Shown: positions 11,134 through 63,465 of the stretch, piece by piece | Layout: every line of letters begins with the position of its first letter | Position numbering within the stretch: position 1 is the first letter of the stretch | From: Dimorphilus gyrociliatus | Taxonomy: Eukaryota > Animalia > Annelida | DNA: 64,000 nt | Direction of reading: 5' to 3' | Assembly: GCA_904063045.1 (NCBI GenBank) | Contig: CAJFCJ010000007.1 | Coordinates: 4,285,404 to 4,349,403 of the forward strand | The notes under the pieces: generated by a model | The model's database searches: none | The model's input: only the letters and a program-made list of their open reading frames with translations | What the model was told of the DNA's origin: nothing | Translations under genes and position numbers: made by a program

Positions 11134-12223
11134 TCAAGAAGCTGATAAAAAAAAACATTTTTTTGGTGCTTTTCTATAAAAGTGCGATAAGAAAAAAATC
11201 TTTTCACTTCTTTGCCTTTGTTATTCTTTATCTATTTTTTCCGTTTTGTTTCTTTTATTCGGTTCTCTTAATTTTTTTTAAGTCACCCTCAATAAGAAAA
11301 AAGGACGTGTGTTGTGTTCACTTTGCCTATTTATATCAATGCTATCATATTCTGAAAATATGTTTTAAGTATACTTGAAAATGTACTTTTAGATAGGAAA
11401 AGGAAACTAATAATGATAAAAAAAATTATTAATACTTTTGTAATTAAATTTCGTTTTCTCAGTAAAACTTGACATTTTTTACAATTTTAATGAAACGTAA
11501 GTTGAAAAACAGTAATGCATGCAATACACAGGTATAAATTTAGTTTGAATTATTCGATTAATATTAACAATTATTTGTTATTTATTAAAAAGTTATTTAA
11601 TCCTTAGTCTAGTATTCCCATATTGATTTTTTTTCTTTAAAATGGGAGCACTAGGTTTAGAAAATCTAATTTATTAACAATAGCCTTTTCTTAATTACAA
11701 CTATTTACTTTGTTTTTTAAATTTGTTATATTTAACCAATATTTTAAAAAATTATGAAGAAATTTTCTATAATAGTATAACGAATAAAAGACAATAAAAT
11801 AGATGTAGGATCTATTATCATGTTTTTACTGAGCAATAAGCATACATTTATATACATATATAGATAGTTTATCAATATTTTAATATTGATAAAACTAGTG
11901 TAATTGTTATTGATTAATGAAAAATTTATGCTAAAATATATATGTGATATATTTTCAATTTGAGCCTATTATCCGCAAGTCGTAAATCTCAAATCTTTTA
12001 TCTATTTACAGTTATTTCTCTTAAAATAACTTGTTATAATAGTATGGTTCTTGTGCTTTACTAATTTTTCTGCAATATAATTTTATAATTGTTTTCGTCC
12101 TAAATGGAATAAAAAGCAACAAGTTAACAGTTGTTTATACTGTATATTGTATATATTTGTTATGAGAACGAAATTTATGTATTAATCAGGAGATAAGTAG
12201 GCCTCAGCACATGTTTCGATCTC

Positions 12224-12236
12224 GTTGCTAAGCAAT
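12224..12236 (+). promoter_or_regulatory. Candidate RFX X-box upstream of KIF17
   Basis: GTTGCTAAGCAAT is a near-palindromic match to GTNRCY-N(0-3)-RGYAAC. It lies just before a putative non-coding first exon (donor ag|gtaccc near 12258) of a ciliary kinesin. Confidence 0.4.
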
Positions 12237-12855
12237 ACTGTAAACAGGAAAAATTAGGTACCCCAATCCGTTCATTTTAGTTTTAGTGGCAGTTTCGACA
12301 GGAAAATTCTCTCGTCCGAATATTTTCTTTCCACAATGAGAGAAAGTGATATCTAATCCTGAAAGGAGGACAATTTTTCATGAAGAAATCAAATACAAAT
12401 TTTTAAAAGGATATTTTCAGGAGAATAATTCAATCAAAATCGGAAAAGAAATATTTATTAGTGAAATTTATAGCGATATATATAGAAAATATATATATAT
12501 ATATATATAATTCTAAGTGTATATATCAATATATATATATAGAATATAAAATCAAAAAAGAATCAATCGTTCATATCTATAACTTAAGTGAAAATTGGTA
12601 AGTTATAATGTTCTATTCAGAATGTTTTTACTTCTAGATTTACGTTGCAAAAAAAAGAAAAAAAACAAAAGAACAAAAAGAAAAAAGCCTTAAATTTTTA
12701 TGAACACATTAAAATCTACGTCTTTTTTCCTTCCTATCTGCTACATTTAAGATCTGCATTTACTTTTTGTTATCTTAAATCTTGAATGTTCCCTCCTTTA
12801 TTTATTAACTTTTCAACGACAAATATTCATTTAGGTATACTAATTGACTGCAAAG

Positions 12856-15800
12856 ATGGCTGAAGCTGTAAAGGTTATCGTAAGGTGTAGGCCTATGAAC
12901 ACCAGAGAAAAAGATTTACGTTGCGAATGTGTGGTATCAATGGATGGTAAAATAGGACAATGTTCAATAAACAATCCTAATGATAAAAAGGCACCACCAA
13001 AATCCTTTACTTTTGACGGAGCGTTTTTTATCGATTCAACCACTGAACAGATTTACAACGATATTGGCTATCCCTTAGTAGAGGTGAGTTCAAATTTTAT
13101 AAAGAATTATCAAGTTTTCACTTAAACTGTACAACAGTTTGTAAATGTCTTAAAAAAATTTTGAGTATTGTATGAACGTACTATAATAATACTATTAGTT
13201 CACCTTTGACTATATAATTAATGAACATATGAAAAAAACGTCAAGTAGTTATTATTTACTCCTAATACATAGGGCGTCACTGAAGGCTATAATGGTACAA
13301 TATTTGCCTACGGGCAAACAGGATGTGGAAAAAGTTTTAGTATGCAGGGTATAACAAATCCAGCAACGCAAAGGGGAATAATACCAAGGTAAGAAATCTT
13401 CTTTCTTACTCTATTATCAATCCTAATATGTTTTGTAATACGACTAATTGAATTGTTCACTGTGTGTCTCTTATCAATTCCCGTATTTTTCCTATTCTTA
13501 TTAAAGCTGCTTATTACGTAATCGACTCATTTATTGATCTTTTTATTCACAATGTTTTAAACAATCTTTCTATTATACGTGTCATTTGAAAGTTAAAACG
13601 CAAGAAGTTAATTTCTTAATCTTGATCAAGTGCTGTGTTATTGAGTTCATATATATGTATATATATAAATTTATACATACATTTTATATATATATATATA
13701 TAGATGTATATACTAATTTATTAATATATAGTATAGATAACAGTTTAAGCTTGATATTTCCACTTAAACTTCACCAAAAAATTCGTTCATTTGGTTATGT
13801 ATTACTCAATTTTAATCTACAATTATTTAAGAATTAACACAGGCCTAGTATATATTTTCTTAAACACGAGAAAGATCGTGCTTTGAGGGGGGTAAAGAGG
13901 AAGAAAGAGAAGAAGAGAGAGTTATTTGCCTATTTTTACATATGTATATATATATACAAATATATAATTTAGAAAGAGAAAGAATGTTTAAACAATTAGA
14001 ATTGTAACTTGATATGAAGAGATATAAAACATTAATATTTGGAAAATGCAGATTAGTATGTTTAGCTCTTCGAAAAATGGTGTAAAAAAGAAAAAAAAAG
14101 CCGAGAATCGAAAGATCGCCAAGTGAAAAGCATAAATATTTTTATTCAATCGATCCTAATGTCATTGTGCATTAGGTGTTCGCCATAACTTGAAGATTTC
14201 CTTATCGATTTTGTTATATTTATATCCTATAAATATAAAAGAATACACATATAGCTCTATTTTATAAATATACATAGAAATTTATATACTATATATATAT
14301 ATCTATACATAAATATAAATACATATTTGTCTTTACATATATAAAAATTTGAAATATATCTTGTTTCCCAGTTGAAACCACTACATTCTTGTACTGTCTT
14401 CTCCCCCACACCAATTCCTTAATTAGCTATGTATTTTATCAATATTATTATAATTATTAACCTTTAATTTTTATTCTTATATATATGGTTTATGTATAAA
14501 ACAGTGAACAATTCATTATTAGTCATTAAATGAGAATGATTTAGCTATCGTTCTTAAAATATCGAAGAAGAAATTATAAATTGCATTTAATGATTTTCTT
14601 AATAGGGCATTTGACCACATTTTCGAAACTGTACAAGTTACGGAAGGCTCGAAATATTTAATCCATTCTTCGTATCTTGAAATCTATAATGAAGAAATAA
14701 GAGATCTACTTGGTAAAGACTCCAAAAAGAAACTAGATTTAAAGGAGCATCCCGAGAAGGGTGTTTATGTTGCAGGTCTTAGTTTACATCCCTGTAAAAG
14801 TGTTATAGACTGTCAAAAAATTATGGAAAAGGGTTGGGATAATAGATCTGTGGGTGCAACACTGATGAACAAGGATTCGTCTAGGAGTCACTCAATATTT
14901 ACTATACATTTAGAAAGGAGCGAAGTAGATGAATCTGGAGAAGAACATATTAGGGCGGGTAAATTAAACTTGGTCGATTTAGCTGGTTCAGAAAGACAGG
15001 GTAAAACCGGGGCAACAGGAGATCGTCTTAAAGAAGCCACTAAAATTAATTTATCACTTTCGGCACTTGGAAACGTTATTTCCGCACTTGTAGATGGAAA
15101 ATCAAAGCACATACCTTACAGAGATTCTAAATTAACTAGGCTATTACAAGATTCTTTGGGAGGTAACACTAAAACTCTTATGGTTGCTTGTCTTTCTCCC
15201 GCCGATAACAACTACGATGAAACATTGTCAACACTAAGATACGCGAACAGAGCCAAAAATATAAAAAATAAGCCTAAAATTAATGAAGATCCTAAGGATG
15301 CTCTTCTAAGAGAATACTCAGACGAAATTGCTAAGCTAAAGGCTATGTTGAGAGGTGAAATACCTGTAGATCCAGCCCAGTTAGAAGGTGGAGTAGGCGG
15401 TAATTTCAAAGCTAATGCTCCAGCACCTCAAATAAAAGAGAAAATCGTTGAAAAAGTTGTATACGTTAATGGGACAGAAGAGCAGGAAGAAGAAAGAAAC
15501 CAATTAAGAGAGGTAGGTGTATTTTATTACAAGGTATTACGTAATTATTAAATAAGCCTTAAACAATTTTTTTGTAAGTAAATGAATAAGATAAAAAAGA
15601 AAATGAGAAACAAGCAAGCTTATTATCATATTGATTAAAATTAGTAGCTAAAATAACGGGCACTTAAAAAAAGCACTTTTTCTACTAATTTATTTGTCTT
15701 TCTTTATGTTTAAGAAAAAAATATCAATAAAACAAATATAAAACACTTTAAATCAATTAATCGAATTATATTAAGGTCTTTGTTTTATAGACCTATGCAG

Positions 15801-39382: not shown

Positions 39383-42300
39383 ATGATAATCAACAATTTA
39401 TTAGTGCAGTTGACTATTATTGCATTCTATGCCATTAAGTGTAAAACTGAAGGTGAAATTCATCTATGGAATAGGTATCATTGTTAATAATATGTCAGCT
39501 ATATGTACAGACATCTTTAGATATACGTTATTATCAATAAGGAAATAAATGTTTTCTAAAAAAAACTGTTTAGGCAATAAGCTTTAATAGATATAACAAT
39601 GTGAGCAATAAGTGAAACTCGTCTAGCAACAACAATGTCTTTGTGCTTACAAATAAGGAAAGTTCTCTGATAGAGTAAAATGATAATCTTCAATTAGTTG
39701 TTTTTTCATTAAATATACATTTATTCTATATAAATGAAACTATTGAAATAATTTATCCAAAACATATTATCACTGTAAAAACCCACTTCTCATATAGTTA
39801 TAAGCAATTTCACAGTTGAATTTGCATAACTTTTTAAAAATAAGTATATATTCTAATATTTCTTATTAATAGCCTGTTAGATATGTATGAAGACTTAAAC
39901 GAAAATGATCTTCAAATTCAACAAAGAACGCGCTTGAAAGACTGCAAATATAAAGTATTTCAGTCGTATCACTACGGATTTCCTAAAGATATGACATTTA
40001 ATGTACTAATCAACAGCATTCGCGATTTAATTAACGATGGTTACTCCGGTTATAAAAGTGGTCACTGGGGTAAAATTGTTATTACTATCAATTTTGCTGA
40101 CTTTTTCAATCAAATTGCAACAAAATGCTTTGAAATTGAGCCAAACAATCCTAATTGCATTTGGGAAATGACTTCCGCCAAAAAAGCATTAGATAATTAC
40201 GAATACAATAATATAAGGGGCAAATCTTCTATGGCCCAAAAACTATCGGGTGTACCTTATTCCGATGAAGAATTATCCGTTATAATAACTTTTCTGGAAT
40301 GCATAGAAAGACGATCGAAATCTTCCTCTTTCATTTATCATCATGAAATAAATTGTCCTAACCCTTGTCTAAAAAAACCTTGCATGAGTATAGATTACGC
40401 AATTCATGATTCGTGTCAGATTGCGTTCCCTGGAGCACAAGAAAATCAATTTATCTGTTTATGCCAACAATATTTTGAGTGGAGTAGTTCTTCATTAAAA
40501 TGCATAGAGGAGGCGGTTTGTGCTGAAGCAGAAGGTATTTGTAAAAACGACGGAATTTGCGTCAGAGACGCAGCGAAGATTAGCACTGGTTTTGTATGCA
40601 AATGCACTGAAACTCATTTTGGTAGAACATGTGAGGCTCCAAGAAATGCTTGCATTGAGAGATATAAAAAAAAACTGAAACCTGGAAATCAGCTATGTGG
40701 AGGATATGACATTGAGGATGGAAAAATGATCGAAGTCTACCCAGGAATGGGGAAAGACGGCAGATTAGGTGAATGCAAACCCATTCTTGGTACTGATAGG
40801 TAAAACCAAAGAAAAAAAGCTGTTAGATTGAATCCCTTATTTTCTTATTGTTTAATCTATTAAAATTAATTGCACGTCTTTGCTATTAAAAGTTTCGGAT
40901 GCTTATGCTATAATGGATTTCGTCACGATGAAAAAGTATCGAAAGATCCTAATTGCCGCCAGAAATATTCAGCTGTGTGCGATAGTAGTGTTTGTCCGCC
41001 TGAAATAGGAAGAAAATGCCGAGAGGGAAAATGTGTTTGTGCCAACATTCTAGAAATAAATACGTTGGAGCTATCCGACGAAATAAGTAGTTCATTTTTT
41101 TTTATCATTTTTCGACAGAAGAAAAGCAATTTGACTATTTTTAACTTTTGTTAGGCTGTAGTGATCTAGAGGCTGCAACAGAGTGGCTTCCATGGGGGCC
41201 TTGTGAACCACATTGTACAACTAGACCAGAACTAAAAAGATATAAAAAACGTCAGAGAAACGGCTGCGCCCTAAAAGATGGAAAATACTGCCATATAATG
41301 CAACAAGCCTTAATATTAACTGAACAGATTGAACGATGCGACAATATTTTCCCTTGTAAGATTGATGGTACTTGGTCAACTTGGAAAGATTGGACCAAAT
41401 GTAGTTTTATATGTGGAAATCAGGCCACCAAGACAAGAGTTAGACTTTGCTATTATAATACAAGCTTTGACTTTAGACAGAATACCAACTTAAACAGGCG
41501 TAAAGTGTTTTTTTTTTATTATTATTATTGAATTTCATTTTCAATACGAGACAGAAATAATTACTTTCTCAACTGTTATCAGATTGGAATAGTTTGATAA
41601 GAGGTAAACCTTGTCAAGGAGATTCGACAGAGACCCAATACTGTACAAACTTAAAGCATTGTCCACCGGGAATTAACCCACAGTTACTAAAAAACTCTCG
41701 TTTAAGACAGTTATTCGATGATCCATTTTTTAATACCTCACTAAATGGTATGACTGTTTGGACAAGATGGAGCAAATGCAGTTTGATCATTAATAAGGAT
41801 TGTGGTATGGGTCAAATGATACGATTTCGCATTTGTCAATATGGACCGGGTTTGTGCCCCGGGATTTCAATGTTTAATATGGGTCAATGCAAAAAACCGT
41901 GTCCAAATAATTATAAACTTGGAACTTGGAGTTCTTGGACAAATTGTAGAAAGGGAAGATGCTTTAGAACTAGATTCTGTAAAGGCTCAGAGGAATTTTG
42001 TGGAAGAAAGAGGAGAGAAACACACGACTGCGTTAAGGACAATGCAAATGCAGCTGAAGCATGCAAAGGCTTATGCAGGTGTTATGGACAGGGTTCGTGA
42101 CAGTGTTTTGTCTTTTCCAACTAATACTATTCTTAACCAATATTATAGTTTTAACTAAAGAAATAGGCTTAATTGCTCTCTTGTATGGTAAGACAATTCT
42201 AGAAAAGAATCGCCATCAATTCATTAAGGGTAGAACTGGAGGCGATATCATGCTCACAAGGAGTAGGTACCTGCAGCGGGTTTTTTTTGTGTATATTTTC

Positions 42301-42713
42301 TTTTGACATACAGGATTTTTGAAGAGATATAAAAAGATGCGAAATCTTTTACGTTAGTATCGAATAGATACTCACAAATGATAGAAATATAATAAATTGC
42401 AGGTATAGAGAAAGGGTTAGCTTGGTACTGGTTTCTATTAATAGGTGGTCTGCCTTTGTTGTGCTGTCCAATTATAACATTTCTTGCATATAATTTTTGT
42501 AATCGTTGTCGGAAAGGCCAAAGATATTCTTCTTTACAAGAAATTGAACACTCGAAGGATAGTCGTAAATATTCAAGGTCATCGAATCAGATTGTTAAGC
42601 CAAAACCACCTAGATATTCTACCATTATATTTAAGGAGGGAGATGCTTCTTCAGACAATTCTTCAACTCTTGTAAAATTATCCGACAATAAAAAAGGTCA
42701 AAGGTTAAAATGA
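39383..42713 (+). CDS. Uncharacterised type-I membrane protein: signal peptide, unknown helical domain, several EGF-like repeats, about four TSP1 repeats, TM helix and short cytoplasmic tail
   Basis: Exon 1 (39383-39452) is MIINNLLVQLTIIAFYAIKCKTE. EGF repeats include CKNDGIC...FVCKCTETHFGRTCE. TSP1 motifs are EWLPWGPCEPHC, WSTWKDWTKCSFICG...RVRLC, WTRWSKCS...RFRIC and WSSWTNC...RTRFC. TM is GLAWYWFLLIGGLPLLCCPIITFLAYNFC. Exon joins at 42090-42400 are uncertain. Confidence 0.8.
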
Positions 42714-42932
42714 AACAAAATTAAATATTAAAAAACTATTTTCTTATATTCATAAATATAATTACATTAAATTGTATAAATTTTATTAAAACTGTTTTAT
42801 AAAAATGCACTTTAATAAAAAGGACATTTAAAGAAACAAGAAAAAAAATAACGTAATAAAAATATAAAAGTATAATAAAAACTATATAGTGCTAAAAACA
42901 TCCTTAACTCTCCTCCCATTAAGTTAGTTTTT

Positions 42933-45900
42933 TTATGAGCAGAACCACAAAATCATTGCTAAGAAGATGTTAACCCATACTGCTTTGATAGCACTACTTC
43001 CAGCAGCTATTCTACATTTTAAAGTATGAAACCTAAAATGGAAGAAAGAGGCAAACTTAACTATGAGTATTTAACTTTGAAGTGGAATCTTACCTATTCT
43101 GTTCGTTACTAAGCATTTTTCTATATTCTTCTTCCATTGTTTGACCATCAAAATACCACGCTCGATCATTAAATGGGTATTCAAAACCCTGACGACATTC
43201 ACACTTGTACCCGCCTCGGTGAAATTTTCTACCGGGTGTCAATAACGGTATCGGGACACACTGAAGGGAAAATGATAATTAACTCTAAGGATAGAGATGG
43301 AAAATGAACACTTATACTAAAGGTCCCGTAAGATTAGATTACGGATTGCTCGAGCTCAAATAGAACGTATGGCACAGGAGAGTATTCACATCTAATAAAT
43401 CCGTGAATATTCCGCCAGTGCCAAGCGTCCGATTAGCTAAAAACTAGGACTACATGATGGAGTCATACTCCAAAGAAAAGGATAATAACAGATACTTACG
43501 TATGTACTCTCATAATGGCAACGGGCAGTATTCTTAAAAGCGTTTGCAATATAGAATTCAGCTGGACATTGATTCAAATCCAGGGTTTCTAATTTAACGT
43601 CTACCGTAACGACTCCTTTAAATTCTAGAGCTGTACCAATCGAATTTTTTCCAAAGAAAGGAACTGAATACGTCACAACCCAATCATTAACGTGACCAAG
43701 ACTGTCTTCCTTCTCTCCACCGCAACTAAAATAGGGCGGGGACCACCAGCCATCATCCTCCTCAGGTGCTCGATAATAAAGGGGGTAAAGTTCAAATTTT
43801 TTAGAAGATGTTCCATTTATATCCGATCGAATCATTGGTTTCTCTGTATATTTGGTTAAGCCGTATGTATTAGATTGCCAACGCTCTTTTACTTCTCTAA
43901 ACCATCGTTCTTCTAAATAAGCTTCATCCAAGCCAGCTTTGTCTAGCGCTCTGTAGTTTTTATTTGCTTGATCAGCATCATCTCCTCTTTTAGTATGGCG
44001 CCAGGCGTACGGACCGAATAACTGACGTGTTTTGCCGTCGGGACCAACATATTTATCTCGGTCAAAGAATATTCCCGATCCATGCAATTTTAAATCTCCC
44101 ATTACATTTGCCAAAGCTTCTCCAAACAATAATTCGATGTTCAGTAGTTTATCACCTCTTAAATTACCATATTCTTCGTACATATCAATATTCTGAAGGA
44201 AATTACTTAAAAAATGTGATAAACGTAGTGCTGTTCTTGCTTGGTTAGAAAATTGCTTTTGAACGCCATAGGCAACATCACCGGGTAATTCTAAGTCATC
44301 CATTGATTTTTCATGACAGTTATCTCTAGTTACTGATTCCTTTTTACGGAGTAAGTCCTGCATACGTTCATGAGCTTTTTTGTCGAAGGTGGCCCTTTTA
44401 GATCGACTTTTAGCATTAGTACTGCGTTTATATCGGGCAACGAAGACCTTTCTCTTTCTCCTCTGAGATGACTCAATCATTTCTTGGGCTTTATTGTAGC
44501 TATATTGCAGTTCCTTTAAGTCAACTGACCGCAAAAATCGCTGCTGTTTTGTCAATATTTTGCTTTGACCGTCTAACGCCTTAATGGAACGTTTTTCAAC
44601 TTTTTCTTTATCTATAACTGGTCCTTTAGCTTCTCGTTTTTCAATTTTTGATTGCTTTTTTTGGACGGAGCGTTTTGAGCGACCAATACCTAGAGTCCCA
44701 TTTCCACGGATGATTGGTATAACTTGTTTCAGGCCTACAGGTAAACATTCAAATCCTCTTTCATACTCTTCCTCAGTTGCGCTTTCAATTTGAGATCCTT
44801 GGAAAGGGCCTCTTTGCCAAGGAGGATATCTGTAACCAGGAAGGCATACGCATTGATAGCCTCCTCGTCGAAAGCCCCAGCCATACAAGGGCTCGCACAT
44901 AGTGGACTTTTTACATCTAGATATATCGGTCAGATATGATTTAGGATTTCCTATTCCAGCAGGACATGGGTTAAAATCAACGCTCAAAAAGTCTATATCT
45001 TGTACAGATGCTGCAGTAATCCTATAAAATAGTACACTCTTATGTAATTTAATTTCTAAACTAGACAAAAAAAACAAATACGAACCAATGTCTTCTTAAA
45101 TGAAACCATTCCAAGTATCTTGGCAAGTGATCAACTATAGGAGCAGAAGCCGAAACAATCCATTTATTTGATCTTCCACAATCGAAATAGGGTCTGGTAA
45201 AATCTACAGGTTGAAATACTTGCTTTTGATTTTGCTGATTTTGTCCTGGAAAAGGTGGACCATAGAAAGTTTTTCCTTCAAACTCGTCAGTAGTAAATTT
45301 TCCAGTTTCGTTCGAATATTTTATACCGACATTATAATTATGTTTCTTGATCGAATCCAAACCTTTCTTACCCCACCCATCGGGCATCCACTTAAAATAC
45401 CATTCATTTAATTTATACGTGTCTCGAGTATAATTGTTTTGTGGACCAGCTCCGTAATCAACTACGTCTATAGTTTGATTTGTGGGCTCTCTTAAAAAAT
45501 TTGTAGGTTCATTATAATCGTCAAATCTAAATGCCCTGGGTCCAAATAGTAACATGGTATGATTTATAGCTATATTTCTATACCAATTAGGATAGGTCTT
45601 ATTAAACTCGAAAAATATTCCTGACCCATTGATGTTATATTCATTGGCACTGACGTCTGCTGCTGCTGAAAAGTAGTAGTACATCAATCCAGGTTGATAT
45701 TTGAAATGATGAGTTTCATTAAGTTTTTGAAAAACATAAGAGTAGAAAAAAGCCCGATTTAAAGCCATATTGTGCAAGTGAAGAAGATTGGTTCTATTCG
45801 GATAAATAACAGTGGACAGAAGTCGATTAAATTGAGGTACTTGACCGACGGTTGTCTCCGGTAAATGAAGTTCTTCTTTAGATTTGGAAGCACAATTTTC

Positions 45901-46080
45901 AGCGTTAACAGCGTCCATTCTTTGTGTAATTTCATCGAATTTATCAAACTTAGCCCATGAATAGGGCGATTTAGATTGGACAACAACTGCTTCTTGCAAT
46001 ACGACGAAAGCAAATATAAGAGCTGCCCCTGCTGTAACTATTCCAAATCGGAAAGTTTCTCCCTTCTTAAATCTCTCCAT
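42933..46080 (-). CDS. Secreted, probably GPI-anchored protein with two tandem GPR158/GPR179-type extracellular (Cache + EGF) modules and no 7TM domain
   Basis: N-terminal hydrophobic signal. Module 1: GSGIFFE, FGPRAFR, TRPYFDCGRSNKWIVS, DFNPC, GFRRGGYQCVCLPGY. Module 2: ARTALRLSHFL, GSGIFFD, FGPYAWR, GWWSPPYFSCGG, WVVTYSVPFFG, FKGVVTVDV, DLNQC, HRGGYKCECRQGFEYP. The last exon is FHTLKCRIAAGSSAIKAVWVNIFLAMILWFCS with a stop at 42933. Confidence 0.85.
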
Positions 46081-46194
46081 TGGTTCCGTTTATCAATCTA
46101 AAACACGATCCTGTTAAAATAACGTAACAAACTGCAGTTCTGCTATATCTTATTCACCTGAGCAGAGATCACTAATCGCAGGTAATCGCCTATA

Positions 46195-46366
46195 GCGCCA
46201 TCTACAAGTTCAGTTTCGAGGTAAGAGAAATATTTGGAAAAAAAAAATTATTTATTTATTGTAAAATTATAATCTTTGATTAAATTAACAGGATAATTCT
46301 TTATTAATTTTTTCCAAATTACGCAACCGGAAGTGACGTTAAATTTTTTTTTTGTGCGCAAGCGCA
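46195..46366. promoter_or_regulatory. Bidirectional promoter (GPR158-like / USP10) with CTCF-like, ETS-CRE and NRF1-like motifs
   Basis: GCGCCATCTA at 46195-46204, CCGGAAGTGACGT at 46327-46339 and TGCGCAAGCGCA at 46355-46366, between ATGs at 46080 (-) and 46466 (+). Confidence 0.65.
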
Positions 46367-46465: not shown

Positions 46466-49400
46466 ATGGAGGGTGAGGATAAGGTAAAAACATAGATTAA
46501 ATCTACTTAAAAATTTTCTGCAAAAGATACCTCATTCTATCGTAAATGGGGACTTTATTAGTAACCATGTGTCAACACTGACTTATACAGAGACCGAACC
46601 TCGGACTCTTTACAACAAAAGATTGATACACACCTAACCCCCTCAATTTTATGCACAAATATTATATTGACAAATATAACTTGTGATGAAAATTCTAATT
46701 AAGCGTCATATCCTCCTACAGTTATCATTATCGTTCCTTGATGTCGACGGTTTGAATGACGACGAAAAGGATGAATTGTCAGGTATTTTACGCGGGAAAG
46801 GTGCTATGGAAATGACTAGTATTGTAAGTAACCTCTATTAAGTGTCACACGAAGGTCGATTAACGAGATTTTTTTAGCCGGTTACATCGTCTGAACAGCA
46901 TAATGAACTTTTTGAAGAAAAAATCGACAATTCTTTAGTAGAAGACGAATATAAAGGACATGGCGAGAGAGCGCACCTGGACCGAGATTGCGATTCCGGA
47001 ATGAATGTGGACGATTCCTTAGTTAGCGGACATGCATTTCCAGATCTTCAAGAACCGTTTCCAGCTCCTTATTTTCCTAATAATATGCCACCATATATTC
47101 CTTGTTATCCAGTCAGTGACGGACAGTCACCAGACTCATGGCACCAGCCTGTGTTTATGCCGTATTATGGCGTCGGAACCTTTCTTCATCACTCGCAACC
47201 TCCATTGTTAGTACCGCAGCATTATCCTCACCCTTACCACTTGCCTTTGCCTGCGGGACTACCACTGGGTTTTGATCCCCACCGACCTCCACCCAATTTC
47301 ATAGACCCGCAGCAACAGGGTCACACTTTTCAGCAACAGCATGTGAAACGTCAGCACCATGCTCAAAGCTGCGACTCTGCCTCGTATAAATCATCCACGG
47401 ATAGCACTGGAACGCCCCCAATGCAGTATTATTACGAAGATAATAACACAGATCCGATGAGCATTAAAGAATTCAGAAAAAAGAGTAACGATAAAAAAAG
47501 CAAAATTGTAACCGTCTTAAACAATGCGGTAAATGCAGACCAACCTGCAACTTTAAATGCAAGTGACGAAAGCACAATCGAGGCAAACGTTTCTGCTGAT
47601 AAAAACTGTTCTAGCCCAGTCAATGCTGCAGAAGAGAACTGTAAAGTTCAAGAGATAAATGAAGTAATAATCCCTGCAAAAGAAAATGGTGAAACTGAAA
47701 ATTTGATTCAAAAATCTGATCCCTGTGATGCATGTAATCATCAAACTATGTCTGAAAAAAACAGTTCCAACGAAACTGAAATGGAATTGAAATTTGGAGA
47801 TTTAGAACCTGAATTGCGTTTGTTGGTTAAAACAAACAATAATAATAATGCGAAAGAGGGTGCTAGCCCAAAATCAACCTTGATCACAAATGTTGATGCA
47901 GCTTCAATTTCCAACTGTGTTAATGAAGAGGCAGAGATTGAAAACAATATTAGCCAAGAATTGACTTCCACCAAGCCATCATCGCCGGATCATCCTGCTG
48001 TTAAAGCAGAAAGCGTAGCGGATGAAGATGCTCGTTTGCGTCCTGTTAAAGACACAGACTTTCCGTGTATTCCAGGAACCAAGCCAGCAGTAAAGGAGTC
48101 AACATCGAAAAGCTGGGCAGGTTTATTTAAAAGGAATCGTGGTCTCCAAAAACCCAACAACATCGACGGAACCGACCGCCCAAAGGAAAACTCATTCGAA
48201 AAGGATGACTTTAGTCCTGAGCAACGAGAACGTCTTGTTCAAGTAGCCGATACCCTATTGGCTTACAAACACTCTTATCAACCGTACCCACTTCGCATGC
48301 GTGGTTTGTGCAACAAAAGCAACTGGTGTTATGTCAATGCAACACTACAGGCGCTCCTCTCATGTTCAGCGTTTGTTCGTTTGCTCAAAAATATACCGTC
48401 CAGTGGTCCAACAGGGTCTGTCTCACCTACACCTATTGCGGACTCTCTTATCGACTTTTTGGGTTACTTTGAGAGCTTTTCGTCACCCGCAGTACTAGTA
48501 GAAAATAAAATAAAACTTAAGAGTAAGTTGACATCTCCTAAATTTGAGCAATATAAACTGGAACTCTTTTACAGATCCAAGAGCAACTCCGCAAGATTTG
48601 AATTTAGGCGTGAAGTTTGAACCCGAGTCCATTTATGAGATGTTAAGAGACTGTGAGAGCCAGCAGATTTTTAAGGTTAGTCATGTTACTAAAGTATTTA
48701 TGGTATATATAACATTCAGGTAAACTTTGTAGGATGGAAGACAAGAAGATGCTGAGGAATTCTTAAGCTTTGTCCTAAATAAATTACATGATGAATTTCT
48801 AGCGGCTATGAAATTAAGAAAGAAACCAGTTGAAAATGGGCTGGCCAAAGAGGTAACTGAAACTGAGGACGCTACCGATAATAATAATTGGGAACAAGTG
48901 ATGCCGAAGAATAAGAGTATAATAACTCGTCATGCAACAGTTGAACAAAGTCCAATAATGGACTTATTCGGAGGTGTTATTCGATCAGCTGTTCGTAAAA
49001 GTGGCGAAAAAGATTCAGCTACTTTACAACCATTTTTTACTCTACAACTTGATATACAACCGGAAAATGTAAACAGTGTACGCGATGCTTTGGAGCATCT
49101 GGCTTCTAAGGAAGTCTTAACTGATGTGACTAGTGGGAAAACAAATCAACAAGTTGAAGCTACACGTCGGACTACGCTTGAACATTTGCCTCCTATTCTT
49201 ATACTTCATCTAAAAGCTTTTGTTTATCAAAAGAACGGGGGAAGCGTAAAAGTTTGCAAAAATGTGGATTTTGATTGCACATTAGAGATCAGTAAAGGTA
49301 TTTGTTTTTTTATAGTTGCTATTCAATTTATTAAACACGTTAAATAATATTGCAGAACTTTTATCATCAACTGTCCGTCAGAAGTACCAATCAGCAAATT

Positions 49401-58680: not shown

Positions 58681-61600
58681 ATGGACGACAATAAAAGAGT
58701 TTGGGTCCCACACCAGACGGATGGTTTCAAATTGGGTCGGATAATCGATTTAGGTTCTGATTCAATTTCTGTTGAACCTTTCGATACACCAGGCCAGGTA
58801 AGAAACAATCTGTTTACATAAATCATTGCTATATACAGTATATATATATATATATATATCATATACTGTATATTACTAATATATAAACATATTTAATATA
58901 CTGTATACATAAATAGCACAAAATTTTACCCCCAACTAGACCCCTCCCTATTCTTTTTTATGCAATCTGAAAATTTTATATCGATTATTTTCTCTCTTAA
59001 CCCTATTGGTTCTTCTTTTATTCTAACGATTTTTTTTCATTCGCGCTCTGTTTTGTTCAAGTCGCTTCAGTTTCGCTTGTTAGACCTATATCGCAAGACT
59101 TTAATACTTGTTAGAAATATTAGTATTAGTAATTCTTCCTATTGATATGATTGTCTATCTTTACTGGTTCCAATAATGAATTGTCAAGTGTTGCATATTG
59201 AATAGAAACACATGTGTAATATAATTATATGCAGTATGTAGGAGTATATCATTATATATTGAATATTTAGATATAAGTATATTATATTATATAGTATATA
59301 CTATAGCAAATTTAATATTCAACAATTTTTTTTATCTCTTCGTTTAAGACTTCTGATTTTTTATTATAGGCAATAAGTGCACCATATGATAGAGTATTTC
59401 CGGCTGAAGAATACGATAACAAGGATGTTGAAGACAATTGCAGTTTAATGTACCTGAATGAAGCTACACTGCTAAATAATTTACGGATTCGCTACAAGAA
59501 GGTTTTAAGCCTATAATTGAATTCATTAATATTCTAAACGTTGCGTTACTACATGCTCTAAAACGAAAATTTCATTTTTTCACCTCTACCTATAGGATGC
59601 CATCTATACATACGTCGCTAACATCTTAATTGCTGTTAATCCATACAAAGATGTGTCACATTTGTATGGGACTGCCGCTATTAAGAACTATCAGGGTAAA
59701 TCCCTTGGCACTGTTCCGCCTCATGTATATGCAATTGCCGATAAAGCTTATCGTGATATGAAAACTTTGAGAGCAAGTCAATCGATAATTGTTTCGGGAG
59801 AATCAGGTGCAGGAAAAACTGAATCAACAAAATACATACTAAAATATCTTACTGAATCATGGGGCACTCACGCCGGACCGATTGAGGATAGAATAAATGA
59901 ATCTAATCCATTGCTAGAAGCATTTGGAAACGCTAAAACGGTCCGCAACAATAATTCATCAAGATTTGGTAAATTTGTCGAAATTCACTTTGATAAGAAG
60001 ATGCTTGTAGCTGGCGGTTATATCTCGCATTATCTATTAGAAAAGAGTAGAATTTGTACGCAGAGTCCTGAAGAGAGAAATTATCACATTTTTTACAGAA
60101 TGTGTGCAGGAGCTCCAGAGACTTTATACAATAGTCTTAAATTAGCTGCACCAGATCAATTTAGGGTAAGTAATAAAGTATAAATATACAGTTTGTAGTC
60201 TATATAATATTATAGCTATATATAGTATATATATATATATATATATATATAATAATATATATATATTAATATATACAATATATAGTGTATATGAAAAAGA
60301 AGCTTTAAATTGAAAAAAAAAAATTAAACAAATTTTTCTCTGCTCTTCTTAGTTTTCTCTTGAACACTGTTCAAAAGAAAATAAAGAAAGGTCTTTTTAA
60401 TGAGCCAAAGCATGATAAAAACTTAGAGTTTTTAAATTTTTATCGTCTAAAGCTTTATCTCTTGCATGATTATTATTACTGTTATGTCGTGATGTGCACA
60501 ACAGTATCTGAATCGTGGGAACACTCAATTCTTTTCTTCAAACTCCGATTTGGCATCGAATAGGAAAAGTCAACAGGTACGTATATGGTTTTCTCTAGAA
60601 TTGAGAATAAAAGCAAAGAACAAAAGAAATATAATCCTTTTTTACTTTTAACTTAAGTATTATAATATCGGATTTATTTTGTTCTTTGCTCCTTTTTTTG
60701 TATCTTTTTTGTTTTGTTTGTTTTTTTTTGACTTTAATTTATTATTTTACCCGACTGAATTATTATAATAATACAAATTTTTTTTAAAAAAAAACTAGAA
60801 AAACTTTAATTTATCAAATGCTAATTTCATTTATAAATGTTCTTTTAGTTCCTCAAGTCTGGAAGCTTGAATGATCCTGTGATGAATGATATTAATGATT
60901 TTGCAGTCACTGATAAAGCGCTTTCTTCTATGGGTATGGAGGATCAAACTAGAAGCTTAATATATTCGGTTGTTGCTGGCATTCTTCATCTTGGAAATGT
61001 TTCATTCGAAGATGATCATGATGATAAGAAAGGTGGTTGTAAGGTGACAGCTGACACTGAACGCTTTTTACAAAACGCCGCTCAACTTTTGGGCGTCGAC
61101 GAGAAAGATCTTAAATCAGAATTAACTTCAAGAGTTATGCAGTCCGCGAAGGCTGGTAAAAGTGGAACGGTAATAAAAGTCCCACTTCGTCAAAGCGAAG
61201 CAAACAATGCAAGAGATGCTTTAGCCAAGTTTATCTATGGAAAGCTATTCGATTATATAGTAAAGTGTGTTAATCAAGCTTTACCGTTTCAAAATTCTCA
61301 AAACTATATTGGTGTTCTGGATATCGCTGGATTTGAGTATTTTCAAGTTAACAGCTTTGAACAGTTTTGTATCAATTATTGTAATGAAAAATTACAACAA
61401 TTCTTTAATGAAAGGATTTTAAAAGAAGAACAAATTTTATACGAAAAGGAAGGTTTAAATGTAAAGAAAATCAACTATATTGATAATCAAGATTGCATCG
61501 ATCTCATTGAAAAAAAATCGATTGGTATTTTTGATGTATTAGACGAAGAGAGTAAATTACCTCAACCAAAACCGGATCACTTTACTAGTGAAGTTCATTC

Positions 61601-63465
61601 GAAAAATAAGAATCACTTTCGTTTGTCTATACCTAGAAAATCGAAATTAAAGGCTCATAGAGAAGTTAGAGACGATGAAGGCTTCCTTATTAGGCACTTT
61701 GCAGGTGCTGTATGCTATCACACTAAGCAGTTCATTGAAAAGAATAACGACGCTTTGCACTTTTCTCTGGAGATGATTATCTCGGAGAGTAAAAGTCCTC
61801 TTGTTAAGGAGATTTGCTCTCCAGATCCAAATGCTAAAAAGGTTCAAACAAAAGGAAAGCTTGCGTTTATATCAGTTGGATCGAAATTTAGAACTCAATT
61901 ATCAACTCTTATGGAGAAGCTTCGTTCAACTGGAACAAGCTTTATTCGTTGCATAAAACCCAATTATAAAATGATTTCGCAATGTTTCGAGGGTATGCCA
62001 ATTCTTATACAACTTCAATGTTCTGGAATGACATCCGTTTTGGAGTTGATGCAGCAAGGTTACCCGTCTAGAACTCAATTTTCTGAACTGTACAACATGT
62101 ATAAACAATACATGCCTCCTGATATTGCTAGGTTGGACGCTAGATTATTTTGTAAAGCTTTGTTCAAAGCTCTTGGATTAAACGAAATGGATTTCAAATT
62201 CGGTCTAACAAAAGTATTTTTTAGGCCAGGAAAATTTGCGGAATTCGATCAAATTATGCGATCTGATCCTGAAAATCTAGCACTACTAATTAAAAAGGTT
62301 AAAAAATGGTTGATATGCAGCAGATGGCGTAAAGCCCAATGGTGTACACTTTCTGTAATAAAACTCAAGAATAAGATTTTGTATAGAAGGGAACTACTCC
62401 TTCTCTTACAGAAGACTATTAAATCGTGGTTGGCTGTTAGGGAATATAGACCACGTATCAAGGCTGTTAGTAGAATACTGGCTTTGCACGATCAATTATC
62501 TGCCGTTGAGCCAATTATACCGCAGTTGAAAAAGGATAAAGATTCAGCAGCCAAATCAGTTAAAAAGGTCAAAGAACGACTTGGAGAGGTTGTCGCTAAA
62601 ATACGCCAAGGAAAACTGGTTGCTGCCAAAGATTTGGAAAAATCATATAGCGAAATGGTTAAGGAAGTTGATAAAAATGTTATGGATATTAGAAAGTTGC
62701 TCGAAAAGCAAAAGGCGGCCGACGAAGCGGATAGGTTAAGAAAGATACAGGAAGAAATGGAGAAAAATAAGAAATTGAAAGAAGAAGAAGAAAGAAAGAA
62801 GAAAGCGGAAGAGGAAGAAAAACGTCTAAAAGCGGAAATGGAATTGAAGAGGAAGAAGGAAGAGGAAGTTGCTCGTAAAGCTGAAGAAGCAGAGAGAAAA
62901 GCGGCTGAAAAGAATGCCGGTAAAATACAAAAAGAAAAAGAAGAAGCTGCTAAAAAGTATTTATTATAAGAATATAATATTAATGAAGATTAATAATATT
63001 TAAAAATTTTTTAAAAATCTATCAGCCAAGAAAGATTGGAACAAGAAAGAAGAGATCGTGAATTGGCATTAACACTAGTTAACGGAGAACAGGGAGCCGT
63101 TGAAGAAGCTGCTCCAACTGCAAGGTATGTATATATAAAAAAGCATTCTTACACTTTGTTAGACGTAGCTGTTATGGAATGTTAATATCAGCAGAATTGC
63201 GTGGTTTTTTATTCTTTTTTTTGCATCCTTACATTACTATTATCGTTGCATTTTATACGAGAAAAATCTCCGCATGCCTAAAATATTGTTGGAATTTGTA
63301 GTATTTTTGTTTGTCTTTCTCGTTAAAACAAACAAACAAACAAACAAATCGCTTATAGCATTATGAAGGCAAAAAAAAAAGAGAAAAAAATCAATCTTGT
63401 AAGGCAAAGTGTTACTTTATACTGCTTTCAAACATGTATATATATATTTATATACAGTATATATA

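What the first reader, a model, noticed from the sequence alone, without database searches (positions are those of the whole stretch)
42933..46080. A 'GPCR without the GPCR': tandem GPR158-type ligand-binding ectodomains ending in a GPI-type signal
Seen: two complete, diverged Cache-like plus EGF-like modules, each ending in the RGGYxCxCxxG[YF]xYP...[GF]xx[IM]E EGF signature. There is then no seven-helix region, only AAGSSAIKA followed by a terminal hydrophobic VWVNIFLAMILWFCS* with no cytoplasmic tail. Established: GPR158/179 are class C-related receptors that use a Cache ectodomain to bind small ligands (glycine for GPR158) or matrix proteoglycans and that dimerise. A small-residue omega site, spacer and terminal hydrophobic tail define GPI signals. 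Inference: a membrane-tethered or shed single-chain pseudo-dimer acting as co-receptor, ligand sink or trans-synaptic partner for GPR158-family receptors. I know of no functional description of such a system. This is the best candidate for a new system in this window.
Basis: partly seen in the sequence, partly recalled or inferred. Interest (0 to 1): 0.85.

Follow-up and report, generated by a model that had tools for sequence, protein, structure and literature searches.

The report
GPI-tethered tandem GPR158-type ectodomain protein
This annelid gene encodes a cell-surface protein made of two copies of the ligand-binding outer part of the glycine receptor GPR158, with no membrane-spanning signalling part and a probable lipid (GPI) anchor; the family is conserved across protostome animals, and I found no published function for it.

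Summary
Window 42933-46080 (minus strand) holds a four-exon gene of Dimorphilus gyrociliatus. Its 927-aa product is identical to the public model DgyrCDS6739. RNA contigs show all three introns spliced as modelled and run unspliced through the stop codon. No class-C 7TM coding sequence occurs anywhere in the 64 kb window.

The protein has a signal peptide and two diverged modules, each with N-terminal helices, a Cache domain and an EGF-like domain. Pfam GPR158_179_EC matches twice (E 9e-41). AlphaFold models of each module match GPR179 and GPR158 ectodomains (Z 9-12). A basic linker with four RX[KR]R sites joins the modules. The protein ends in a small-residue cluster plus a 15-residue hydrophobic tail.

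That C-terminal pattern recurs in 169 of 173 full-length orthologues from molluscs, annelids, flatworms, rotifers and arthropods. Insect orthologues are 64-80% identical to a sandfly query; the fly gene is probably CG31195. The tandem duplication predates the Spiralia/Arthropoda split.

So the architecture and the GPI reading hold, but this is an annotated, widespread orphan family, not something special to this window. The co-receptor and pseudo-dimer function remains inference. I found no functional paper.

The parts
46081..46187 (-). 5' UTR (minimum extent)
   Evidence: The spliced RNA contig of run X5 begins at 46187 (table 8).
45086..46080 (-). Exon 1: start codon, signal peptide (about residues 1-36) and most of module 1 (N-terminal helices plus Cache, to residue 332)
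   Evidence: ORF and splice donor TG|GTTCGT. The joint 45085/45020 is seen in RNA contigs of X1 and X5. Orthologues read ...RYLEWFHLRR..., which fixes the distal donor.
45973..46080 (-). Signal peptide region (residues 1-36; hydrophobic core 13-36)
   Evidence: 19-mer Kyte-Doolittle hydrophobicity (KD) up to 2.19 at residues 8-38. 43 of 50 aligned orthologues have an N-terminal hydrophobic 12-mer. No SignalP run was possible.
44727..45963 (-). Module 1 (residues 40-430, interrupted by intron 1): three N-terminal helices, Cache domain, EGF-like domain; 8 conserved Cys; 8 N-glycosylation sequons, 3 of them invariant
   Evidence: AF2 of module 1 alone gives pLDDT 82 and pTM 0.82. VIA-align gives 3lic Z 15.0, GPR179 8irj_A Z 12.3 over 259 residues and GPR158 7ewl_A Z 10.7. 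Invariant columns come; Cys and sequon positions.
45022..45085 (-). Intron 1 (64 nt, GT-AG)
43500..45021 (-). Exon 2: end of module 1 with EGF-like 1, the linker, and the Cache part of module 2
44385..44726 (-). Inter-module linker (residues 431-544): basic (19 K, 14 R in the 110 residues 436-545), low AF2 confidence, four RX[KR]R furin-type motifs at residues 446, 519, 528 and 538
   Evidence: motifs, composition; pLDDT below 50 over 436-486 and 518-540. All 32 long-linker (spiralian) orthologues carry at least one RX[KR]R, against 6 of 141 short-linker (arthropod) ones.
43002..44384 (-). Module 2 (residues 545-905, interrupted by introns 2 and 3): N-terminal helices, Cache domain, EGF-like domain; 8 conserved Cys
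   Evidence: Pfam PF22572 at residues 758-865 and PF22673 at 702-812. phmmer to GPR158 7ewl/7she gives E 1e-9. VIA-align gives GPR179 8d1b_A Z 10.1 over 243 residues, 8irj_A Z 9.7 over 258, and GPR158 7ewl_A Z 8.8.
43261..43499 (-). Intron 2 (239 nt, GT-AG); read through in the public 859-aa model DgyrCDS6740
   Evidence: The spliced joint is in X1, X3 and X5 contigs, and no retained-intron contig was seen.
43094..43260 (-). Exon 3: EGF-like domain of module 2 (CVPI...RGGYKCECRQGFEYP...)
43033..43093 (-). Intron 3 (61 nt, GT-AG)
42933..43032 (-). Exon 4 coding part: last conserved Cys (C901), the GPI-type signal and the stop codon
42936..43010 (-). Putative GPI-attachment signal (residues 903-927): small-residue cluster A-A-G-S-S, spacer AIKA, hydrophobic VWVNIFLAMILWFC, one residue after it
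   Evidence: In 169 of 173 full-length orthologues the sequence after the last Cys is R-[LIV]-[ASG]-[GA]-[AG]-[SA]-[SGT], then a spacer, then a hydrophobic 12-mer (KD at least 1.8). The median is 28 residues after the Cys and 5 after the hydrophobic window. No dedicated GPI predictor was available.
42787..42932 (-). 3' UTR with ATTAAA (42816) and AATAAA (42787)
   Evidence: RNA contigs run collinearly through the stop codon to 42851 (X3) and 42881 (X5).

Best explanation
Shown: the locus is an expressed four-exon gene for a 927-aa secretory-pathway glycoprotein. The protein consists of a signal peptide, two diverged tandem copies of the GPR158/179-type ectodomain (N-terminal helices, Cache domain, three-disulfide EGF-like domain), a basic linker, and a short C-terminal hydrophobic tail. 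It has no 7TM or cytoplasmic part. It belongs to a single-copy-like family conserved from flatworms, rotifers, annelids and molluscs to ticks, crustaceans and all insect orders. The internal duplication is older than the Spiralia/Arthropoda split. Inferred, fairly strong: the C-terminus is a GPI-attachment signal, so the mature protein sits on the outer leaflet of the plasma membrane and can be shed. Inferred, moderate: the two modules pack against each other in a fixed way, as an intramolecular counterpart of the Cache-Cache homodimer of GPR158/179. In spiralians the linker is cut by a furin-type convertase, leaving module 1 associated with GPI-anchored module 2, much as in alpha2-delta. Inferred, weak: because it cannot signal on its own, it works as a ligand-binding, non-signalling surface subunit. 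That would mean a co-receptor or auxiliary subunit that presents a small ligand or matrix/proteoglycan partner to a transmembrane protein, in the manner of GFR-alpha or alpha2-delta.
For: Gene model and expression: exon/intron structure, identity to P0231, and spliced RNA contigs in three independent studies (X5, X1, X3). Domains: Pfam, phmmer and profile hits to GPR158/179 PDB chains, an AF2 whole-chain model with pLDDT 81.8 and pTM 0.81, and structural matches of module 2 and module 1 to GPR179, GPR158 and bacterial Cache sensors. No 7TM: no 7tm_3; no internal hydrophobic segment; tblastn of three class-C 7TM regions against the window gives nothing credible, while the ectodomain control finds both modules; no minus-strand joint leaving exon 4. 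Secretory route: N-terminal hydrophobic segment, 10 N-X-S/T sequons of which N95, N151 and N173 are invariant, and 8 conserved Cys per module. GPI signal: the conserved pattern in 169 of 173 orthologues although the tail sequence itself is not conserved. Age and constraint: modules 1, 2 and GPCR ectodomains each form one branch (SH-aLRT 100/97/97) with mirrored species order; listed insect orthologues are 64-80% identical to the sandfly query P0074. Fixed module packing: a pTM of 0.81 over 927 residues, including about 110 disordered ones, cannot be reached if two roughly 380-residue bodies were placed at random (inference; module 1 alone gives 0.82). Furin sites. Shedding or secretion: a protein named CG31195 (802 aa, 93.7 kDa) is listed among abundant proteins of male accessory-gland secretions of Bactrocera dorsalis (PMC4652233).
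Against: No GPI predictor or experiment was available. The Dimorphilus tail is short and contains Lys911 and Asn916. A tail-less single-pass anchor or simple secretion cannot be excluded from sequence alone. No ligand, partner, expression pattern or phenotype is known, so the co-receptor role rests only on architecture and analogy. The residue aligned with GPR158 E271 is invariant Asp in module 1 but variable in module 2 (D28/K13/R5; Ser in Dimorphilus), so at least one module may not keep an ancestral pocket. That E271 lines the glycine pocket is my recollection and was not verified here.
Confidence: 0.6

Rival explanations
1. The C-terminal hydrophobic stretch is a real transmembrane helix. 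The protein would then be a type I single-pass membrane protein with essentially no cytoplasmic tail, not a GPI-anchored one.
For: AF2 draws residues 906-926 as one helix. A few orthologues have 3-5 partly basic residues after the hydrophobic stretch, such as ...RLLN...SRIR and ...KKF.
Against: The uninterrupted hydrophobic run is only about 12-17 residues in most members. It is preceded by an almost invariant small-residue cluster (A-G-A-S-S) that has no role in a TM anchor. The tail sequence is unconserved while its pattern is conserved. The median is 5 residues after the hydrophobic window, and there is no conserved stop-transfer charge cluster.
Confidence: 0.12
2. The protein functions mainly as a soluble or shed extracellular factor, either a decoy or ligand sink or a matrix component. 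The hydrophobic tail would serve only transiently, or be removed.
For: A CG31195-named protein of matching size is abundant in secreted accessory-gland fluid of an oriental fruit fly (PMC4652233). Furin-type sites in spiralian linkers could free module 1. The public 859-aa isoform model lacks the tail.
Against: The tail pattern is conserved in 169 of 173 orthologues, which argues that membrane tethering matters. The intron-retaining 859-aa isoform also lacks the EGF-like domain of module 2 and is not seen in RNA contigs. Shedding of GPI proteins is fully compatible with the main explanation.
Confidence: 0.15
3. The gene model is truncated. The real product would be a GPR158-type GPCR whose 7TM exons lie further downstream, or were missed.
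For: None found. Some database entries of orthologues are auto-named 'G-protein coupled receptor 158'.
Against: RNA contigs from three studies pass collinearly through the stop codon into a 3' UTR with poly(A) signals. The only joint near exon 4 has GT..AG on the plus strand and belongs to the convergent neighbour. No class-C 7TM similarity exists anywhere in the 64 kb window; the best hit (E 0.017) lies inside a myosin-like ORF on the other strand. 173 orthologues of 790-980 aa from many phyla end at the same place.
Confidence: 0.01

Closest known systems
GPR158 (mGlyR) and GPR179, class C orphan/glycine receptors (PDB 7EWL, 7SHE, 8IRJ, 8D1B)
   Same: Each module has the same ectodomain plan: N-terminal helices, a Cache/PAS-like core and an EGF-like cysteine-rich part. 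Similarity is recognisable by sequence (Pfam PF22572; phmmer E 1e-9) and by fold (Z 9-12 over 220-260 residues). GPR158/179 ectodomains dimerise through two Cache helices (PMC8611064, PMC11437087).
   Different: There is no 7TM domain, no cytoplasmic RGS7-binding tail, two modules in one chain and a GPI-type end. Each module has 8 conserved Cys, whereas the GPR179 ectodomain has 12 (one Cache pair plus five CR pairs; PMC11437087). I infer from the Cys count that the membrane-proximal 'spiral' loop, which contacts ECL2 in the receptors (PMC8611064), is missing.
Drosophila Smog (CG31660), the fly GPR158-like GPCR and Fog receptor
   Same: It shares the GPR158-type ectodomain, and it co-occurs with the tandem family in insects (PMC6778782, PMC9574626).
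   Different: Smog is a 7TM receptor with one ectodomain. The tandem protein is a separate gene (probably CG31195), and its modules branch outside the GPCR ectodomain group. No link to Fog/Smog signalling is known.
Voltage-gated calcium channel alpha2-delta subunits and CACHD1
   Same: These are extracellular Cache-containing glycoproteins that lack their own signalling domain. Alpha2-delta is GPI-anchored and proteolytically cut into two associated pieces, and it acts as an auxiliary subunit (PMC9901441, PMC3112168). There is weak fold similarity through the Cache domain (8if4_A Z 6.2).
   Different: The tandem protein has no VWA domain. Its Cache domains are of the GPR158 type with EGF-like domains, not dCache_1. 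There is no detectable sequence relationship beyond the fold, so this is an analogy and not membership.
GPI-anchored ligand-binding co-receptors such as GFR-alpha (general knowledge, not tested here)
   Same: The logic is the same: a lipid-tethered ligand-binding ectodomain that must signal through a separate transmembrane partner.
   Different: The fold is unrelated. For the tandem Cache protein, the partner and the ligand are both unknown.
'GPR158/179 extracellular domain-containing protein' family (insect CG31195-like; public DgyrCDS6739/6740)
   Same: This is the family the gene belongs to. It matches in length class, signal peptide, two modules, invariant Cys and sequon pattern, and C-terminal signal.
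   Different: The Dimorphilus protein has the longest class of linker (127 residues by the measure, four RX[KR]R). It also has a Ser at the otherwise mostly acidic or basic position before the module 2 Cache Cys, followed by a short insertion.

Membership tests
GPR158/GPR179 (mGlyR-type) class C GPCRs | Cache plus EGF-like ectodomain (Pfam PF22572) | tested here: met
   Two matches with whole-protein E 9.3e-41. Fold matches to 8irj, 8d1b and 7ewl for both modules.
GPR158/GPR179 (mGlyR-type) class C GPCRs | Class C seven-transmembrane domain (Pfam 7tm_3) | tested here: not met
   No 7tm_3 hit, while three GPCR-type relatives score E 1e-25 to 1e-42 in the same scan. No internal hydrophobic segment. 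No 7TM similarity in the window. Transcripts end after the stop codon.
GPR158/GPR179 (mGlyR-type) class C GPCRs | Cytoplasmic tail that recruits RGS7-Gbeta5 | tested here: not met
   The protein ends one residue after the hydrophobic tail.
Tandem 'GPR158/179 extracellular domain-containing protein' family (CG31195-like) | Signal peptide, module 1, linker, module 2 in one chain of about 790-980 aa | tested here: met
   Full-length alignment with 49 orthologues at 37-65% identity. Both module HMMs match end to end.
Tandem 'GPR158/179 extracellular domain-containing protein' family (CG31195-like) | C-terminal C-R-[LIV]-small-small-small-small motif followed by a hydrophobic tail | tested here: met
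   CRIAAGSS...VWVNIFLAMILWFCS; the pattern is present in 169 of 173 members.
GPI-anchored proteins | N-terminal signal peptide | tested here: inconclusive
   A hydrophobic segment at residues 8-38 follows a basic N-terminus, and 43 of 50 orthologues have one. No SignalP was available.
GPI-anchored proteins | Omega site of small residues, short polar spacer, terminal hydrophobic stretch, no cytoplasmic residues | tested here: met
   Heuristic test only. The candidate omega region is A904-S908, the spacer is AIKA and the hydrophobic run is 912-926.
GPI-anchored proteins | Actual GPI attachment (PI-PLC release, anchor mass spectrometry) | not testable with these tools
   This needs an experiment.
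Alpha2-delta / CACHD1 | VWA domain with MIDAS motif plus dCache_1 domains | tested here: not met
   No VWA or dCache_1 Pfam hit. Only weak Cache-level fold similarity (8if4_A Z 6.2).

The most novel reading that the evidence does not exclude
The family is the ligand-binding half of a split receptor system found in protostomes. A lipid-anchored, single-chain pseudo-dimer of Cache domains captures a small ligand or a proteoglycan and hands the signal to a separate transmembrane partner. The partner might be a GPR158/Smog-type GPCR or an ion channel. This would be the Cache-domain counterpart of GFR-alpha/RET or alpha2-delta/CaV.
Probability: 0.2. Interest if true: 0.8.

Novelty: new variant of a known kind. 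Interest (0 to 1): 0.55.

Why it matters
GPR158 (mGlyR) and GPR179 are studied intensively as brain and retinal receptors, and their Cache ectodomain is a drug target. A second, very old lineage appears to use the same ectodomain twice in one chain, without any 7TM part, on a lipid anchor. It is held at 64-80% identity among the listed insect orthologues, which shows the module has a conserved function independent of G-protein or RGS coupling. The family is an unstudied surface protein present in model organisms (Drosophila, probably CG31195), in disease vectors (ticks, mosquitoes, sandflies) and in parasites (schistosomes, liver flukes). Finding its ligand or partner could open a new extracellular signalling or adhesion axis in protostomes. 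It could also shed light on how the GPR158 ectodomain dimer works. For this window, though, the result is mainly a correct annotation of a conserved orphan gene.

Tried and rejected
**Proximal splice donor for intron 1.** I first used the donor at 45107, which gives 920 aa. Orthologues and the RNA joint support the distal donor at 45086 instead.

**Literature searches.** Searches for a functional paper on the tandem family used several word sets: GPR158, Cache, GPI-anchored, GPR158-like, smog paralogue, and Drosophila-species gene names. None described the family.

**Laboute et al. 2023.** This is the glycine-pocket paper and it is not held. I therefore could not verify the pocket residues and did not carry out a pocket comparison. 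Only the position aligned with E271 was examined.

**Sequence and profile alignment to GPR158 PDB chains.** The alignment covers only the C-terminal half of the Cache domain plus the EGF part. The N-terminal half had to be compared by fold.

**ESM Atlas look-up of the fly orthologue.** It gave only the automatic family name.

**The 7TM tblastn hit at 61650-61904.** Its E-value is 0.017, and I rejected it. It lies in a 700-aa myosin-like ORF on the plus strand, upstream of the gene.

**The plus-strand joint 42701>42941.** I considered it as a possible continuation of the gene and rejected it. Its GT..AG ends are on the plus strand, so it belongs to the convergent neighbour.

**Pseudo-dimer geometry.** It could not be compared with the GPR158 dimer, because model coordinates and PAE are not returned by the tools.
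Full report
**What is there.** The window is from the annelid Dimorphilus gyrociliatus. The longest exon translation matches public protein DgyrCDS6740 at 100% identity. On the minus strand, reading frames and splice signals give four exons: 46080-45086, 45021-43500, 43260-43094 and 43032-42933. The introns are GT-AG and 64, 239 and 61 nt long. The spliced translation is 927 aa and is letter-for-letter the public model DgyrCDS6739 (P0231). The second public model, DgyrCDS6740 (859 aa), reads through intron 2 and so lacks the second EGF-like domain and the tail.

**Expression and the 3' end.** I laid Logan contigs of four public runs on 42600-46300. A 2883-nt contig of run X5 spans 46187 to 42941 with all three introns removed exactly as modelled. 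The skipped ends read CT..AC on the plus strand, which is GT..AG for a minus-strand gene. Two metatranscriptomes from other studies (X1, X3) show the same joints. Contigs continue collinearly through the stop codon to 42881 (X5) and 42851 (X3). ATTAAA and AATAAA follow at 42816 and 42787. The only other joint, 42701>42941, has GT..AG on the plus strand and belongs to the convergent neighbour.

As a direct test for hidden receptor exons, I ran tblastn with the 7TM regions of three GPCR-type relatives against the whole window. Nothing credible came up. The best hit (E 0.017) lies inside a myosin-like ORF on the other strand, upstream of the gene. The ectodomain control found both modules. The refutation test 'transcripts splice into 7TM exons' therefore fails to refute the finding.

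**Domains and fold.**
- Pfam finds GPR158_179_EC twice (E 9.3e-41) plus the Cache-type PDC sensor model, and no 7tm_3. Three single-module relatives scanned in the same call each show one EC domain followed by 7tm_3.
- phmmer and a family profile hit the GPR158 and GPR179 PDB chains.
- The two halves are homologous to each other over their whole length: 23% identity, 399 columns, E 4e-15.
- AlphaFold2 on a 50-sequence alignment gives mean pLDDT 81.8 and pTM 0.81. Only the linker (436-545) is of low confidence.
- In that model, module 2 (547-904) aligns with GPR179 (8d1b_A Z 10.1 over 243 residues; 8irj_A Z 9.7 over 258) and with GPR158 (7ewl_A Z 8.8).
- Module 1 folded alone (pLDDT 82, pTM 0.82) matches bacterial Cache sensors (3lic Z 15.0). 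Over nearly its whole length it also matches GPR179 (Z 12.3, 259 residues, model 10-391 against chain 60-362) and GPR158 (Z 10.7).

Both modules therefore have the plan of N-terminal helices, Cache core and EGF-like domain described for GPR158/179 (PMC8611064, PMC11437087). Each module has 8 conserved cysteines, whereas the GPR179 ectodomain has 12. I infer that the membrane-proximal spiral loop, which touches the 7TM domain in the receptors, is absent.

**Topology.** The only hydrophobic segments are residues 8-38 and 903-927. There are ten N-X-S/T sequons, and three of them (N95, N151, N173) are invariant across 50 orthologues. This fits passage through the secretory pathway.

After the last conserved cysteine the protein reads R-I-A-A-G-S-S-A-I-K-A, then fifteen hydrophobic residues, then one Ser. 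Among 173 full-length family members collected here, 169 share the pattern: C-R-[LIV]-[ASG]-[GA]-[AG]-[SA]-[SGT], a short spacer, and a hydrophobic 12-mer. The median is 28 residues after the Cys and 5 after the hydrophobic window. The tail sequence itself is not conserved. That is the signature of a GPI-attachment signal rather than a transmembrane anchor. No dedicated predictor or experiment was available, so I put GPI anchoring at roughly 0.75.

**The family.** Homologues of 790-980 aa with the same architecture occur in the following groups:
- annelids, molluscs, flatworms including schistosomes and liver fluke, rotifers and an orthonectid;
- ticks, mites, crustaceans, springtails and every insect order sampled.

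The listed insect and other arthropod orthologues are 64-80% identical to the sandfly query P0074. All are named 'uncharacterized' or 'GPR158/179 extracellular domain-containing protein', with some stray automatic names ('GPR158', 'Fras1-related'). The named deuterostome hit (Ptychodera) is a single-module 7TM receptor. I saw no nematode, deuterostome or cnidarian tandem member, but the survey was not exhaustive.

A maximum-likelihood tree used modules 1 and 2 from 16 species plus five GPCR ectodomains. It places each of the three groups on one branch (SH-aLRT 100/97/97). The Spiralia/Arthropoda order is mirrored inside both module clades. Module 2 lies nearer the GPCR ectodomains, and module 1 sits on a long branch (HMM scores agree). 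The duplication therefore predates the protostome radiation.

**The fly orthologue.** The D. simulans-group gene (P0217, 807 aa) lies on the opposite strand inside a gene encoding an hnRNP Q-type protein, that is Syncrip. PMC3934907 states that CG31195 maps to an intron of Syp. A Bactrocera protein named CG31195 has 802 aa (PMC4652233). I therefore take CG31195 as the probable D. melanogaster orthologue, although this is not verified by sequence.

Only four papers in the library mention CG31195, and none is functional:
- it is a miR-184 target with tandem sites in S2R+ cells;
- it is a mapping marker;
- a P-element in its 5' UTR may explain an eye phenotype attributed to Syp;
- it is abundant in accessory-gland secretions.

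The fly 7TM homologue of GPR158 is a different gene, smog/CG31660, the Fog receptor.

**Mechanism.** The architecture is established. The rest is inference.

1. The whole-chain pTM of 0.81 equals that of module 1 alone. It could not be reached if the two 380-residue bodies were placed arbitrarily, so AlphaFold predicts a fixed module-module packing. GPR158/179 ectodomains dimerise through two Cache helices, and the corresponding helix of module 1 (NRTxLLHLHNMALNRAFF) is the most conserved stretch of the family. An intramolecular pseudo-dimer is therefore plausible. I could not inspect coordinates.

2. All 32 long-linker (spiralian) members carry at least one RX[KR]R motif; Dimorphilus has four. 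Only 6 of 141 short-linker arthropod members do. This suggests convertase cleavage between the modules in Spiralia, reminiscent of alpha2-delta.

3. With no signalling part of its own, the protein most likely acts as a tethered ligand-binding or partner-binding subunit, or after shedding as a soluble one. Nothing here identifies the ligand or partner. The residue aligned with GPR158 E271 is invariant Asp in module 1 but variable in module 2. This is only a weak hint about which module keeps a pocket.

**Verdict.** The structural interpretation (no GPCR part, tandem Cache/EGF modules, GPI-type end) is supported, and the functional interpretation is untested. The gene is not a peculiarity of this window. 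It is a correctly annotated member of a large, deeply conserved and apparently unstudied protostome family. I rate it a new variant of a known kind: a receptor ectodomain reused as a lipid-anchored tandem protein. The interest is moderate.

Noticed in passing
window 43261-43499: The public isoform model DgyrCDS6740 (859 aa) is an intron 2 read-through. It ends in ...YESTYVSICYYPFLWSMTPSCSPSF and lacks the second EGF-like domain and the tail. RNA contigs of three runs show only the spliced form, although contigs drop rare variants.
   Followed up: partly
window 40870-42713 (+) and joint 42701>42941: The convergent plus-strand neighbour encodes thrombospondin type-1-like repeats (WSxW...C motifs) and a short tail. 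One X5 contig shows a plus-strand GT..AG joint from 42701 to 42941. An alternative terminal exon of the neighbour would then overlap the last coding exon of this gene in antisense. Only 30 nt support it, so it may be an assembly-graph join.
   Followed up: no
L001:1-14899 and 10001-13526 (D. simulans-group assemblies); P0201 (Diaphorina citri): In flies the orthologue is nested on the opposite strand inside the Syncrip/hnRNP Q gene. A psyllid gene model fuses RRM domains with the tandem Cache protein, which suggests the same neighbourhood in Hemiptera. In Dimorphilus the neighbours are different.
   Followed up: partly
window 44385-44726: The long basic linker with RX[KR]R motifs is a spiralian feature: 32 of 32 long-linker members have it. 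It is essentially absent from arthropod orthologues (6 of 141), whose linkers are about 48 residues at the median.
   Followed up: partly
window 47001-48620 (+): A 539-aa ORF begins 920 bp upstream of the gene on the other strand. It is proline/glutamine-rich at the start and ends in a ubiquitin-specific-protease-like motif (GLCNKSNWCYVNATLQAL). It is probably the first exon of a USP10-type deubiquitinase.
   Followed up: no
window 60867-62969 (+): A 700-aa ORF shows unconventional-myosin motor and tail features. It was the source of the spurious weak 7TM tblastn hit.
   Followed up: no
residues 764-776 of the protein (window about 43690-43728): Dimorphilus module 2 has Ser where most orthologues have Asp, Lys or Arg before the Cache cysteine (PYF-x-C). 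This is followed by a short insertion (GGEKEDSLGHVND) not seen in the other 49 aligned sequences.
   Followed up: partly
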